Assembly: GCA_003693705.1 (NCBI GenBank)
Contig: RBZT01000125.1
Span: forward strand, 186,001-250,000
Length of the DNA: 64,000 nucleotides
Source: Polymyxa betae A26-41
Taxonomy: Eukaryota > Protista > Endomyxa: Phytomyxea
Direction: 5' to 3'
Below, piece by piece: positions 31,300 through 40,999 of this stretch. The notes under the pieces are model-generated. The model ran no database searches. It was given only the letters and a program-made list of their open reading frames with translations, and was not told the DNA's origin. The position numbers and the translations under genes are program-made. Position 1 is the stretch's first letter, and each line of letters begins with the position of its first letter.

Positions 31300-32371
31300 A
31301 TGGCTACGACCGCCGCCGAGAAGTTACGGATCGCGACACACTTCATCTTGCAGAGCCCGACCGGGCAAATCGATCAGGTCTTACGTGATGTTCGGGTTCT
31401 GCTCGGCAGCGATGCCTCAGTCCTGGGTAAAATCCAAATGGAGGCGATCCTAACCAAATACAATCAAACGCAATTTGTATTCGCAACATCTCCTGATTCA
31501 CCTGATCATAATATCCTTTGCTGCCCTCAAGCTTTTGTTGATGGGTCTATCTATTTTGATCCGATCGCAAAGAAGGTAATACCATTTTGGACTTACAAAA
31601 TCAACGATTTAGTAAATCTTTTGCAGCACTATAAATTTGATAATATCAATCGCACCTGGAGTGCAGACAGCAGCAAACCCAAATCGCTGAATTCCAACAT
31701 CGAGCAGTATCGTGCATTAATCCAGGATGCTGTTCAGAAATATGCAAGCAGCACGTATTTAGACGCTAGCAAATATGCAACGGGCGTCTTCGCAAATGAT
31801 CAAGGTTCTGACCTAACGCCTATGCCTTTCGCTTTTGACAAACTGCCTTTAGGTGACATTACCATGATCATTAGCGCCAAGAATGTTGCACTGCATAATT
31901 TCTGGTCAGGAAGCTGGCGTGGCATTTTCACAATGAACGTGAGTGAACAAGGCCTTACGCAGCTGTCCGCTCGTATCAAGATTAACGTGCATTACTTTGA
32001 AGACGGAAACGTTCAGCTCAACACGGAATTCAACCAAACTGAAACTATTAAGGTAGAAATAAGGCAATCTGGGAGTTGGATGTTGTCCCAAACATTGAGT
32101 AGGTTGAAGAACCAGGTGCTACAGCAGCGAATGTTTATTCGATAATGGACTCAATCGAATCCGAGTTCCAAACCAAGCTGGAAGAGCTCTACGTTGATAT
32201 GCACAAATATACATTCACAGGAATGCGCCGGTTCCTTCCAGTAACTCGTAATCCGATGGATTGTAAGGCTATGAACACAGACCTTGTAATGTTTTTCTCA
32301 AATGTTTTGTAGGGAACCCCAATGCTCATAAACTAGCGCCCCAATTAAAAATTAATCAAATCTATGAATAA
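31300..32371 (+). CDS. CAPZA: F-actin capping protein subunit alpha
   Basis: FILQSPTGQIDQVLRDVR, NFWSGSWR, INVHYFEDGNVQLN, MRRFLPVTR. Confidence 0.95.
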
Positions 32372-32427
32372 CCTTATTAAAGAATGGAGTATGTGCAATC
32401 TCTGAGTAAATATAATTTTTGAATTGT

Positions 32428-34005
32428 TTAACCGCAATCGGACTTGCAATCATCACCGCCTAATGGCTCGACTTGAATAGTGGAATGCGTAATACCAAAT
32501 TGTTCTTTTAGAATTCGTTGAGATGATGATAATATCTGAAAGATGGTCATTACACGACCTATAAATTTGTGCCAAAGGACAAACCGCTTCTTGATGACCA
32601 ATCTTGTCGACTTCTAAATGTACAGACAGCGATGTTTTGCCCGGTTTAATAGACCAGATATGGAGATCATGGACTTTCCTAACGTGAGCCACATCTTGGA
32701 GCTTTCTTCTCACCATTTTGTTGTTAATGTGCGTCGGGGCTCCTTCCATCAAAACGTGAACACACTCTCGAAGTAGACCTATCAGTCGCTGAACAATTGA
32801 AGGGAACCGAAATTGCATGAGGGCATACCGAGCGTTGAGAATAAGACAATAATACCAAATCCGAATGTGCAGATAGGGTCGATAAAGACCCAATTCGGGT
32901 GATACCAGATTAACGCTGAAGCAATAATCACTCCGACCTTGTATACAATCAATACCAAACAGAAGGATTCACTCAGCGAGCTAACCGATTGAACCATATC
33001 ACCAATCGCATGGACAATTGCAGCTCTAACATTGAGGTTCTCATGGCTGGGATGTTGATATTGCTCGAGCAACGGGTTCTCCAGATCCTTTGAACTGATC
33101 AGCAATTCTATTCGGAAAGTTGTTTGTTGGGCACTTTTAAGTCACTGTGACTATGAGAATGGCCATGCGACAGGTTCGGCTTGGATCCACATTCATCAGC
33201 ATGGGCATGAGAATGGCCATGCGACCCACTAGCATGTGAATGGCCATGCGACTCAGTGGAATGTGAATGGCCATGAGATCCATGAGAGTGCGAATGGCCT
33301 GAAGAATGCAGTACAAGAGCAATGATTGCATTAACAACAAGGCCAAGGCAGGCCAAAATCAACATCAGTTCTCCGTTGATGGGCGCTGGATTTTGTAAGC
33401 GATAAAACGCTTCTACAAACAATCCTCCAGTGACGACCCAGATCAAAATAATACTGAGGAGAGCGCCAATAATTTCAGTTCTGTACCTACCGCACGTTAA
33501 TCAATCTGTTGCTGGAATTTGAAATTACCTAACCATCCAAAGGAAAGGTGTTCGGTTGCTGGTCTAGCAGACAGCCACAATGCAAACACTGATATGAGGA
33601 ATCCTAATGAGGATCAATCATCTGCTTCCCATACAGAAATTCAAAAGCACACCTGCCAAATCAGCAAGCAGATGAGCGGCATCTGTCATTATTGCCAGAG
33701 AATTAGCAACGTATCCACCAGCAGCTTCGGCCACCATAAAAAACACACAGAACAAGGCGGCAATTAGTAGTTTTCTTTGAGCTGCAGCAGCATCTCTAGA
33801 CACCATAAGAAAAAAGAAGGATTTAGGGTACGCAATAATACCCTGAAACAAGGGCGTCAGCGGCTAATCCAGTACCAGGCCCAGCATGAATGGCGGTTAG
33901 CAATTCTAGCTGCGGATCGTCGGATTTGGTAGGATTTGCGTCCAGCCTATCTAAAGCGATGTCGCCGCTGGCACTGTCCACATGGCACATGGAGCAGCTG
34001 GACAT
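32428..34005 (-). CDS. Cation diffusion facilitator zinc transporter (ZnT/MTP1-like) with His-rich loop
   Basis: [17 protein letters not shown], His-rich SHGHSH repeats, [47 protein letters not shown]. Confidence 0.95.
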
Positions 34006-36115: not shown

Positions 36116-38223
36116 TCAACTCAATTGTTTTATGTGCAAAATCTTACCATTTCGATTGGGTAAAAAGATGGGAGGTGTCTTGAATGGTGCTGGCGTCGGA
36201 GTCTGTCGAGCTGGCGTCGGAGTCTGTCGAGCTGCAGACGAGACAGACGACAGTTTCGAAGGCAGTCGACTCCCAACACTGCTGACAGATGGCGGTAATA
36301 CCAGCCCACAGACGTCCGTCGTGATATTCAGGTACCTTTGCAACGACCGTGTTGACGTTTGCGATTTCGGGATGTAGACTTGCAGCGGGCCATTCCTGGA
36401 TAATGCCGCCCGGGTCTGGTTCGTATCCAGCATTGGCCGTTTCGGATGCGGAATCGGATCTCCGACACAGAGTTTACGAACGGCACTGCTGCGCTGACAC
36501 AAGATCGTGTGATTGGTCAGATAAGCGAAGGCGCAATTGGCATCGTATGAATAACGTCCTGAATGGACATTAAACCCGCTCAAGGTTGGGCTGTCCATGG
36601 CGCCTATACCGAACCAGGTCAACCTAGATTCCACGTTTAGCTTGTCCCAGAGCGCACGGTCCTCCGGGTCGTACTGGAAATGGACATGCGGCCCGCTCCA
36701 CGATCCTCCTTCACATAGCGCGTCGGTGATGGTTGCTGCCACGTTCGACAGCTTCTGTCCAGTTAGGACTTGATCGCCGACCTTTACGATAGGATTGACG
36801 ATATGCTGTTCAGGGATTCAGTCATCGGTCATTTATGATCGTGCTCGTACATAGTAGAGGGTCTTCCATCCATACCCGTGATCGATTTCAACTCTGCATT
36901 TCGAGACCGACGAGACGGTTCCTGGCGCTGAGAAACAATTTCACATTTAGACAGCGCCCAAGAACTGCTTCCTGACCGGCGGCGACCACCGTCCATGTAA
37001 GGGGAGACGATCTCCTGAAATCAGATCGGCTGAAATCTAACGCCGTATAATGCATGTTGATAGGACTCGACTGCACGATCTGCTGCGTCGATAACGACAG
37101 CGCCAGAGCCTCATTTGAGGCGGCGAACATATCGCCTCGACCATGAGCGCTGCCTCCGATCGTCCACGTCTCACCTTCTGGGTACCTAGGCAGACGTTGA
37201 CCACGAATAGAACACTTCTAACGTTAATCAATACGGTAGGTGAAAAACATCCGGCGGAGGTCGAAGACAATCGGTTGTGCAGGACGACGTTGCTGTTATG
37301 ATTTGCTGATCATAGACTCGTCCTCGGTATCTGACACGATATAAGCTGGGTCCAGCACCTCCATTTCCTATCAACGACCCGATCTGTGCGTATGTTCAGC
37401 GATTTGGCTTTGATAATCCAGATGGTAACGCTCACATCACGCCCAGCGCTGAAAAACCCGTTGAATCGCTTGGTTAAGGTCGTCAATGAGGTGATATTTG
37501 TGGTTGAACCTGAATCCAGATTGACCAGTTCGATATTGATTGGTGCACCAGGCTGATATCCTGACATTTCCGGGTATCAGATCATAAGATTGACGATGAT
37601 GGATTCAGATTCGCACCTTGGAAAGAGCAGCAGATCGTCAGATAGCCTTCAGAGAGCTGATTGATGTTCAGAACCGAGATGGAGTTGATGGCGCCTTGTG
37701 GCTGGCTACAATCGGCATTCGCTCCGGGCAGGACCGATAGAGCCGCTGCAAATGGCGGCCCTGAGACTTTGACAGATGCGGTTCCTTGAAGAACAGAATT
37801 CAGATAAATGGATGCCTTGAAGGCGTCGTTGTCGGATGTCAGAAGCGTCCATATATACATCGAAGAATACGATAGCTTGTAGCATGCTACGACAATGTAA
37901 GAAGTTGTCTTTGCGCTCCAGATGAAAATATTGGTGAAGATACCTGAAGACGGCAAATTGGATGTTTTCAGAGCAGTTTGAAAATCGCCTCCAGAGCTAG
38001 TCCCAACTCGCAGCTCGAGAGTGCCAGATGTGTATCCTTGCCATGCGAACAGAATGAAGATTTTACCATCAGAAGAAGCAGGAAGACTTGATGAAGATGG
38101 TGTTATTGAGCAGTCCCAACCCAATGGAACCGTTGATGTTAGCGAAATTCCTGATAAAGTAAATGCTTCTGACACAGACAAAATCACAGAAAGTTGCAAA
38201 ATAAATCCAATTAAAGGATACAT
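36116..38223 (-). CDS. Secreted M23A (LasA/beta-lytic-like) zinc metallopeptidase, paralog A; 3' end uncertain
   Basis: Signal peptide (..ILSVSEA|FTL). Spliced core GGSAHG...HYTALDF...WTVVAAAPGTVSSVSKCRVEIDHGYGWKTLYYHIVNPIVKVGDQVLTGQKL...DALCEGGSWSGPHVHFQ...GRYSYDANC. Confidence 0.88.
36189..36234. repeat. 21-bp perfect tandem repeat encoding ARQTPTP x2 in the paralog A tail
   Basis: gctggcgtcggagtctgtcga appears twice. Confidence 0.9.
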
Positions 38224-38421: not shown

Positions 38422-40999
38422 TCAGAAATCGAAAATACATAATGACAATAAGACGCAGATATACACAACAACTAGATCGCTGGCTTTCAGTGCTGAAGAG
38501 GTCGTAGATTTCGAATCATGAGTAACGTTTGATTGGACGTTGCTAGTTCGGAGGCCAGCAGCTCCACCAGCAACTGAGCTTTGAACAGTAGACTTTCGAA
38601 CAGTTCCAGCTTGCGCATTTAACGACGATCTTGCCGTGGAGAGCAACCTAGCTCCTGAAGTAGATGTAAGCGAGCTCTTGATGCTTGGCAAGTTCGATGA
38701 GGACATGCTGCTGCTCGGTGTTGAAGACTGAATCGACATCGAGGATGAGCCTGAAACAACAGCACTTGGCCTATTCGGAAGCTACTTGAATTAACAGTCA
38801 CCGAAATAAACGGATAACGTACTTAGCAGTCGCAATACCATTGCCGTTTGTTGATGTAGGCGCAGGAGTAGGTCCCGGGTTTCCCTACATCAGAAGTCAA
38901 AATCAACACATAAAAATTGTCATATAAACGCACGCCGGCACCACCACCACCACCACCACCACCACCACCACCGCCGCCAGGCGAAGGTCGAGCACTCGAA
39001 GTAGGAGCTGACGACAACTTTGATATCGGTACTGGATAGATAATTGGTGCGGTAGTGCTGTTTCTCAAGCAACCATCGGATGATAGGTTCAGATATCGTT
39101 GCGGTCGATTGACGACAATAGAATCGGTATCCGGCACGACATAAACCCTCAACCCGCCGTTTTTTGACAGTGCTCGGCGCGTCGCATTCACGTCACGATA
39201 TGTTGCACGATTATGGAGCAGTCCCTTGCCAACACAGGTTTTTGGCACCACAGATAGTTGGCGAACGCAAGTATCAGTATAATTGGTGACATACGCATAT
39301 AAGCAATCATTATCATACGAATAACGACCTCCATGGATTATATAATCAGAGAGCGTAGTACCATCTACAGCTCCAATTCCGAACCATGTTAGTCTACGAA
39401 TCAACAATCAGATTCGCAAAAATTTAGACCAAGTACACAATACTGAAAATGGAGGTGAGGCCCGCCCCAAGCCCCGCCTTCACACAGAGCATCTGATTTC
39501 AATAAAGCTGCAGCAGCCAGCTTCTGACCGGTTCTAACGTAGTCACCGACTTTCACGACCGGATTGATTAGATGCTAAATTCAGTGTTCAAATATCATAA
39601 CGTTGAAGGGGCAGATATCGTACATAGTATAATGTTCTCCACCCATGCCCATGATCAATTTCAACTTTGCATTTGGAGACGGTAATAACCTGACCGGCGG
39701 CTATATGTACGGTTAAGAAGAATCTAGTTCATCTAACCAAACGGGGCATACCAGATGCAGTAATAGACCAGTTTAAGGGTGAAAAATTCCGGGTGGGGTT
39801 GTTGAAATCCAAAGAGGTATAATGCAGATTTGATGGTGTAGCCTGGACGATTTCCTGCGTGGACGGTAGCAGCGCCAAAGTCTCGTTGGAAGCAGCAAAC
39901 ATATCACCACGACCATGTGGACTGCCACCTAATACCCAACGTTCCCCTTCCGGGAATCTACACAGGAAATTAGCGTCAATAGATCAGCCAACGGCTGCAA
40001 GCATACGGCAACGCGAAAACGTCAACAGGTGGGCGCAGGCAATCGGTTTGACAGTTCGTGTCAAAAACTATTTCCTGCCCGAGATATTCGGTGTCACGGT
40101 AACGAGCCTTGAGTCTGCTTGAACCAACGCCAGCCAAGCCCAATAAGTACCCGGCCTATTCTAGTTCTGAGCACAGAACAAACAAAACAAGATCAATGAA
40201 CCGACCTCACGATAGGCACTAAACCAGCCACTAAACCGCATCTTCAAAGGATTCAGTGTCGTTATGACACTGCTATAACCGCTTTCGCCATTCTCGATTT
40301 CGACACTGACCGATGACCCGGGCTGATAACCTAAATAAGGCCTGAGCATTTCCAGCGTCTCTGAAGGCAAAACCGACCGACCCTTCATGATGCAACAAAC
40401 GGTGACCATTTGTTCGGAAATCTCGTTGATGGTTATGGGCGTGGCTCCCGGGTTTAAGCTATTCTTTGAGGATGGATCACAGGTCTGAGAGCTGCCGTAG
40501 ACCAAGATCGTTTTGACTGAAAACGGGTATTTGACATAGGCAGATGCAGATCCGACCAAGGTCGAGTCAAGATACACGGCGACCTTCAGCTGATCTTGAT
40601 CGGATTGTAGCATGGTCCAGATTGCCGTTGATGAGTAAAAGACTTTAAAGCATCCTAGCATTGAATTAGTCGAGGATATTTGATTAGTATGGGAGAGCTA
40701 CCTGATGAGGCAACACCGGGAACCGTGGTAGGAGTAAGCAGCTGCAATGTGTTATTCGACGATGTTCGAATTTGCAGCGTCCCGGATGTGTATCCAGTCC
40801 AAGCAATCAGAACGTAGGCCCGGCCGGTCGTTGAAGCATCAATAGTAGATAATGAACTCGGCAGAGTGCAATCCCAAATACTGGGAGCTGAGTCACTTAA
40901 AGAGATACCTTCTAAAGTGAAGGCAGATTCTGCTGTCAATGACAACAGATGCCATACTGCCAGGTTTAGAACAAAGCGAATCCCGCTCTGCATTGCCAT
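38422..40999 (-). CDS. Secreted, probably GPI-anchored M23A (LasA-like) metallopeptidase, paralog B
   Basis: Signal peptide (..LTAESA|FTL). Core GGSPHG...HYTSLDF...AGQVITVSKCKVEIDHGHGWRTLYYHLINPVVKVGD...DALCEGGAWGGPHLHFQ...GRYSYDNDC, then Gly13, a Ser/Thr stalk and a hydrophobic C-terminus (VVVYICVLLSLCIFDF). Confidence 0.88.
38940..38978 (-). repeat. (GGT)11(GGC)2 trinucleotide tract encoding 13 glycines
   Basis: acc repeats on the + strand, in frame within paralog B. Confidence 0.95.

What the first reader, a model, noticed from the sequence alone, without database searches (positions are those of the whole stretch)
38422..39010. A glycyl-glycine endopeptidase carrying its own Gly13 substrate between enzyme and GPI-like anchor
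Seen: paralog B runs catalytic domain - Pro/Ser linker - G13 - Ser/Thr-rich stalk - small residues (TSSA) - hydrophobic C-terminus with almost no cytosolic tail. Paralog A lacks the Gly tract and an evident anchor. Established: M23A enzymes cleave polyglycine, and a Ser-rich stalk plus terminal hydrophobic stretch is the GPI signal layout. Inference: the Gly13 tract is a built-in shedding site, so B is surface-displayed and released by itself or by soluble paralog A. That would be a two-part tethered/soluble protease system.
Basis: inference. Interest (0 to 1): 0.85.

Follow-up and report, generated by a model that had tools for sequence, protein, structure and literature searches.

The report
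Tethered protease with glycine-run linker
A beet-root parasite carries two bacterial-type proteases of a family that cuts glycine-glycine bonds, and one is built to be tethered to the cell surface through a run of 13 glycines it might cut to free itself, but the run looks like a recent DNA-slippage expansion, so a dedicated release switch is possible, not shown.

Summary
The anatomy holds, by gene model only (no RNA data). The genome matches Polymyxa betae. Two tandem intron-bearing LasA-type (M23A) genes keep all catalytic residues. B ends in linker, G13, S/T stalk and a GPI-like tail; A has no anchor; GPI transamidase genes are present. The tract is the longest (GGN)n run in the 27-Mb genome, but its codons are GGC GGC (GGT)11, while A and B are nearly saturated at synonymous sites. 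Its present length is therefore far younger than the duplication, and A has its own perfect 21-nt duplication at the same linker spot. That argues for a slippage-prone spacer and against an old co-evolved A/B pair. Shedding stays plausible: an engineered membrane-displayed lysostaphin cuts its own Gly-Gly linker in trans (PMC13544749). Gly-Gly specificity is untested here: loop 1 is H(x)35D rather than about H(x)12-14D, and the propeptide is replaced. No eukaryotic ortholog was found, so the conservation test could not be run. Odds: spacer, cleavage absent or incidental 0.50; functional self-shedding 0.28; A as dedicated sheddase 0.07; model wrong 0.15. The scan noted this locus only on this window.

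The parts
40702..40999 (-). B exon 1: predicted signal peptide and start of the beta-rich N-terminal module (exons 1-4, down to 40007)
   Evidence: 38-49% identical to A exons 1-4; no Pfam match
39752..39957 (-). B exon 5: first Zn ligand His (39917-39915) and Asp (39809-39807), H(x)35D with loop-1 insertion
   Evidence: alignment A1; bacterial spacing mostly 12-14; 63% identical to A with mostly synonymous changes
39444..39700 (-). B exons 6-7 with intron 6: His81 equivalent (39574-39572), ALCEGG motif, HxH (39457-39449)
   Evidence: the matching frame of A hits LasA, pseudoalterin and Blp in the PDB
39066..39393 (-). B exon 8, 5' part: Tyr151 equivalent, C-terminal Cys, and a further ~50-residue segment conserved in A with three shared N-glycosylation sequons
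   Evidence: alignment A2
38979..39065 (-). Pro/Ser linker, 29 residues
38940..38978 (-). Gly13 tract, codons GGC GGC (GGT)11, followed by Ala-Gly
38885..38933 (-). B intron 8 (49 nt, GC 31%); if retained the frame stays open and ends without an anchor at 38823
38823..38884 (-). B exon 9: Gly/Pro/Thr continuation of the linker
38771..38822 (-). B intron 9 (52 nt)
38422..38770 (-). B exon 10: Ser/Thr stalk, omega candidate at 38499, hydrophobic tail 38475-38431, stop
36116..38223 (-). Paralog A: same N-terminal module and M23A domain, no Gly tract, no anchor
36189..36234 (-). Perfect 21-nt tandem duplication in A's linker, at the position matching B's Gly tract

Best explanation
B is a secreted, glycosylated, GPI-type tethered M23A peptidase of bacterial origin; A is its old, unanchored duplicate. 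The region after the folded part is a free spacer that tolerates length change. In B a short Gly-rich patch was recently stretched by (GGT)n slippage to G13; in A the same spot gained a 7-residue duplication. The tract works as a flexible hinge that holds the enzyme off the surface. If B or A cuts it, the release is a side effect of Gly-Gly specificity, not an old dedicated switch. Shown from sequence: anatomy, catalytic residues, codon purity, age order, GPI machinery. Inferred: splicing, anchoring, activity, substrate (bacterial peptidoglycan bridges most likely, Gly-rich host proteins possible).
For: Tract codons GGC GGC (GGT)11 although Gly codons in these genes are even (GGT 24%; eleven in a row about 2e-7). 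Four-fold sites of A and B differ at 70% (JC about 2); an 11-codon pure run survives dS 0.5 with P about 0.007. The other (GGN)8+ runs examined in the genome, mostly poly-Pro on the other strand, have mixed codons, longest pure run 5 or less. A carries a 100% identical 21-nt repeat at the matching place. Two other frames, paralogs of each other, carry G8/G9, one with a signal-peptide-like start. Two of 46 bacterial M23A-type hits carry G5 after the catalytic domain. Loop 1, which lines the groove (PMC9783410), has a conserved insertion.
Against: The longest GGN run of the whole genome sits in one of only two M23A genes found; my rough baseline makes that about 1 in 100, though post hoc. Purity dates the last length change, not the origin: slippage can also keep a selected tract pure. 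A mixed-codon core of five Gly around an Ala flanks the pure run and is itself a LasA-type site. A cleavable run next to an active Gly-Gly peptidase is unlikely to be neutral if tethering matters.
Confidence: 0.5

Rival explanations
1. Functional self-shedding. GPI-anchored B molecules, crowded on the membrane, cut each other's Gly tract in trans (or in cis across the 29-residue linker) and release the enzyme; slippage lengthened the site and was kept because release is useful.
For: All catalytic residues present. LasA cuts Gly-Gly and Gly-X (PMC9662197). Membrane display raised self-release of an engineered lysostaphin fusion up to about 12-fold, in trans and only with an active enzyme (PMC13544749). 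The tract is the genome's longest and lies exactly between enzyme and stalk.
Against: Specificity untested; loop-1 insertion and a foreign N-terminal module may block or retune the groove; M23A enzymes need other proteases to mature (PMC8715609). The precedent is M23B and artificial. No ortholog to show conservation.
Confidence: 0.28
2. Two-part system: soluble A is the dedicated sheddase of tethered B.
For: Tandem position, only two copies, one anchored and one not.
Against: The duplication is old and the present tract young. A's last 22 codons are 36% GC against 54% in the exon core, as if A simply lost its tail. B has its own intact active site and a higher local concentration than A. No co-expression data.
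Confidence: 0.07
3. The 3' model is wrong or incomplete: intron 8 is retained or a GT inside the tract is used, giving a soluble B; or the tail is a plain C-terminal membrane helix; or B is not expressed. Any tethered/soluble switch would then be splicing, not proteolysis.
For: No RNA data. Intron 8 has no in-frame stop and read-through ends with no hydrophobic tail. Two nearer acceptors after donor 38822 give an anchorless frame, via 38-41-nt introns.
Against: Introns 8 and 9 match the other 14 in size, donor type and low GC; only the 52- and 58-nt choices among normal-sized introns exist and both open the stalk and tail.
Confidence: 0.15

Closest known systems
LasA (staphylolysin), beta-lytic protease Blp, pseudoalterin: MEROPS M23A
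   Same: H..D, His81, HxH, Tyr151 equivalents, ALCEGG motif and Cys pattern; PDB hits 3IT5, 8AF1, 6IK4; signal peptide
   Different: Eukaryotic intron-bearing genes; H(x)35D; propeptide replaced by an unrelated beta-rich module; extra ~50-residue segment with N-glycosylation sequons; B has a stalk and GPI-like tail
Engineered Fc-CHAP-lysostaphin (PMC13544749)
   Same: M23 enzyme that is both enzyme and substrate at a Gly-Gly linker; release boosted by membrane display
   Different: Artificial, M23B, two-Gly linker on the N-terminal side, cleavage demonstrated; here natural, G13, C-terminal, untested
Polyglycine linker of maize ChitA and fungal polyglycine hydrolases (PMC9912923)
   Same: Natural poly-Gly spacer in a secreted modular protein that is cut at Gly-Gly bonds
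   Different: There the cutter is an enemy's beta-lactamase-like protease; here enzyme and tract are in one chain
Laterally acquired NlpC/P60 peptidoglycan hydrolases of Trichomonas vaginalis (bioRxiv 10.1101/320382, PMC10461829; abstracts seen)
   Same: Parasitic protist with bacterial-type wall hydrolases
   Different: Different fold and family; no Gly tract claimed
poly_jg8601.t1 in the P. betae secretome table of PMC12503489
   Same: A secreted P. betae protein with Pfam M23 (524 aa, domain 304-380), the only M23 entry in the stored part of the table
   Different: Probably one of these two genes (A fits better) under another gene model; not verified; the paper's text does not discuss it

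Membership tests
M23A peptidase | Zn ligands H(x)nD and HxH | tested here: met
   both paralogs
M23A peptidase | His81 and Tyr151 equivalents; LasA-type Cys pairs and C-terminal subdomain | tested here: met
   exon-by-exon alignment only
M23A peptidase | Loop-1 spacing of about 12-14 residues between His and Asp | tested here: not met
   35 residues in B and a similar insertion in A, against mostly 12-14 (18-20 in two) in bacterial hits; a variant feature, the ligands still align
M23A peptidase | LasA-type N-terminal propeptide | tested here: not met
   No tblastn match of bacterial pro-regions to exons 1-3; module has no Pfam or sequence relatives
M23A peptidase | Gly-Gly endopeptidase activity | not testable with these tools
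   Inferred from family only
Pfam PF01551 | Score above the gathering cut-off | tested here: inconclusive
   Single exons score 15-17 bits against 28.7; the joined protein was not searched
GPI-anchored protein | Signal peptide, small-residue omega site, polar spacer, terminal hydrophobic stretch without tail | tested here: met
   Own rule-based check; no NetGPI or PredGPI run
GPI-anchored protein | GPI transamidase in the organism | tested here: met
   Gaa1 E 1e-51, Gpi16 in six pieces, Peptidase_C13 two pieces (C13 may also be legumain)
GPI-anchored protein | Actual GPI attachment | not testable with these tools
   Needs PI-PLC release or mass spectrometry
Conserved autoproteolytic shedding site | Site kept in orthologs and older than recent slippage | tested here: inconclusive
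   No ortholog found; codon purity points to a young length

The most novel reading that the evidence does not exclude
A natural GPI-tethered M23A peptidase that releases itself by cutting its own polyglycine linker when crowded on the parasite surface, with the release rate tunable by microsatellite length: the natural counterpart of an engineered self-releasing lysostaphin.
Probability: 0.28. Interest if true: 0.75.

Novelty: new variant of a known kind. Interest (0 to 1): 0.45.

Why it matters
I found no paper describing an M23A peptidase of a plasmodiophorid beyond one unremarked table row, and none describing a membrane-tethered natural one. If B frees itself at G13 it would be a natural self-shedding peptidase whose site is a mutable microsatellite, and it would give a handle on how an obligate root parasite deals with bacteria or Gly-rich host proteins. 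If not, the tolerance of G13 beside the active site would itself suggest that the loop-1 insertion changed specificity or keeps the enzyme latent. One peptide assay separates the two.

Tried and rejected
Following the operators' note, the spliced proteins were never joined for a search or a fold; all searches were exon by exon or on natural open frames, so full-length Pfam scores and a model of the active site are missing. Ortholog hunts were blank: phmmer over 1.84 billion representatives gave only bacterial-type M23A and three repeat artefacts; N-terminal module none, but that search sees only 117-373 aa proteins; metagenomes none; the one bacterial genome hit is a 51-codon frame, spurious. 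A neighbouring gene found Spongospora and Plasmodiophora proteins in the 90% collection, so those proteomes are in the pool. A scaffolded alignment of exons misaligned and was dropped. The N-terminal fold was low-confidence (pLDDT 45, best Z 5.9) and is not used. Rejected: bacterial contamination (introns, eukaryotic neighbours); an intron hidden in loop 1 (codon-level conservation); an anchor for A via a 213-nt intron (weak tail, atypical size); tract spliced out.

Full report
Organism and setting. The genome has 27,085,814 bases in 1,001 contigs; the Polymyxa betae draft has 1,001 contigs, 27,085,946 bp and 45.1% GC (PMC6328671). A neighbouring gene has Spongospora subterranea and Plasmodiophora brassicae proteins as best hits. 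I take the window as P. betae, a plasmodiophorid root parasite of beet.

Gene models. Two genes lie in tandem on the minus strand. B (40999-38422, 10 exons, 709 aa) and A (38223-36116, 8 exons, 582 aa) share seven GT-AG introns at the same positions and phases; all 16 modelled introns are 45-57 nt. The own-genome searches found only these two copies.

Enzyme. A natural open frame of A matches pseudoalterin, LasA and Blp in the PDB at E 3e-5 to 9e-5, and 50 of 53 phmmer hits align to the catalytic exons and have bacterial M23A architecture. Both paralogs keep the His and Asp of the first motif, the His81 equivalent, HxH, the Tyr151 equivalent and LasA-type cysteines (residue roles from PMC9662197). 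Two things differ. The His-Asp spacing is 35 residues against mostly 12-14 in the bacterial hits; the insertion is coding and well conserved between A and B and lies in loop 1, a wall of the substrate groove (PMC9783410). The LasA propeptide is replaced by a beta-rich module without detected relatives. Gly-Gly cutting is therefore likely but not safe to assume.

The observed layout. After the LasA-like core B has about 50 more residues conserved in A, a 29-residue Pro/Ser linker, G13 at 38978-38940, Ala-Gly, a short exon, a 92-residue stalk with 45% Ser+Thr, a Ser-Ser-Ala omega candidate 24 residues from the end and a hydrophobic 15-mer of mean hydropathy 3.11. Only this frame among 397 in the window joins such a tail to such a stalk. 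Gaa1 and Gpi16 are in the genome. Three N-glycosylation sequons are shared by A and B in exon 8. A ends without a hydrophobic stretch, an AATAAA lies shortly after its stop, and no downstream exon supplies a convincing anchor. No AG lies between 38995 and 38885, so dropping the tract needs an intron about twice the normal size.

Is the tract special? It is the longest run of GGN triplets in the genome: 12 places have eight or more, ours has 13, the next 10 (one contig-end place was not fetched). Most others are poly-Pro read from the other strand; two are paralogous frames with G8 and G9, one with a signal-peptide-like start. With about three such tracts among some hundreds of secreted proteins (my estimate), one falling in an M23A gene is roughly a 1-in-100 event, found after the fact. 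That is the main support for function.

How old is it? The codons are GGC GGC (GGT)11. Gly codons elsewhere in A and B are even, so eleven GGT in a row has a chance of about 2e-7. All other runs examined are mixed, with pure stretches of five or fewer. A and B differ at 70% of four-fold sites, near saturation, and a pure 11-codon run would survive a synonymous distance of 0.5 with probability 0.007. The present length was set by slippage long after the duplication. A has a perfect 21-nt duplication at the matching linker position, so this spot slips in both genes. Two caveats: slippage can keep a selected tract pure, and the mixed-codon glycines around the pure run may be an older short site.

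Would it be cut? LasA cuts Gly-Gly and Gly-X bonds (PMC9662197) and Blp cuts a pentaglycine probe (PMC8715609). An engineered lysostaphin fusion cuts its own Gly-Gly linker in trans, not in cis, up to about 12-fold more when displayed on a membrane, and only when catalytically active (PMC13544749). So if B is active with LasA-like specificity, B-on-B release is the expected outcome, and A is not needed. Against this, M23A enzymes depend on other proteases for maturation, the groove here is altered, and at least one bacterial M23A has G5 shortly after its catalytic domain (P0052), with unknown fate. My product of odds (model right 0.85, active on Gly-Gly 0.55, cut in vivo 0.75) gives about 0.35 that release happens at all; part of that would be incidental.

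Orthologs. None was found, although Spongospora and Plasmodiophora proteins are in the pool. The pair may be restricted to Polymyxa, but divergent or unannotated copies could be missed. The secretome table of PMC12503489 lists one P. betae M23 protein, poly_jg8601.t1; the table is cut in storage and excludes proteins with predicted membrane helices.

Verdict. The best reading is a tethered M23A peptidase with a slippage-grown flexible spacer (0.50); functional self-shedding is a live, cheaply testable rival (0.28); a dedicated A-cuts-B system is unlikely (0.07); a different 3' splice model remains (0.15). It works like LasA and, possibly, like the engineered self-releasing lysostaphin; it is an M23A variant, failing the loop-1 and propeptide features. 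Interest 0.45.

Noticed in passing
L021 (G000:C613, about 251082) and L010 (G000:C318, about 8741): Two paralogous frames share a mixed-codon G8/G9 tract; L021 starts with a signal-peptide-like stretch about 60 residues upstream. They would be candidate in-trans substrates of A or B, or simply show poly-Gly as an ordinary spacer here.
   Followed up: partly
window 37585-38163 and 40383-40924 (-): N-terminal module: language-model neighbours are all Laminin_G_3/ConA-like lectin domains but at 0.82, below the reliable range; the fold was low-confidence all-beta.
   Followed up: partly
window 36098-36038 (-): Possible 61-nt intron just after A's stop codon, with a branch-like CTGAT before the AG; a strong-looking donor at 36147 has no acceptor at normal distance.
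   Followed up: partly
window 37887-37943, 36624-36674, 40331-40381 (-): Three introns are in frame and stop-free (A introns 1 and 7, B intron 2), so retention would keep the frame; A intron 7 is 59% GC and sits right after HxH.
   Followed up: no
window 37237-37383 (-): A has a Gly-Gly-Ala-Gly motif between its N-terminal module and catalytic domain, a possible LasA-type maturation site; B lacks it.
   Followed up: no
P0052: Bacterial M23A with four Arg and five Gly about 10 residues after the catalytic domain, before further domains.
   Followed up: no
window 32400-34000 (-): Cation-diffusion-facilitator-like zinc transporter with a His-rich 27-nt repeat (33200-33299), 2 kb from the zinc peptidases; named from my own reading of the ORFs.
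   Followed up: no
window 31300-32145 (+): F-actin capping protein alpha, 52-57% identical to Plasmodiophora and Spongospora proteins; used as control.
   Followed up: yes
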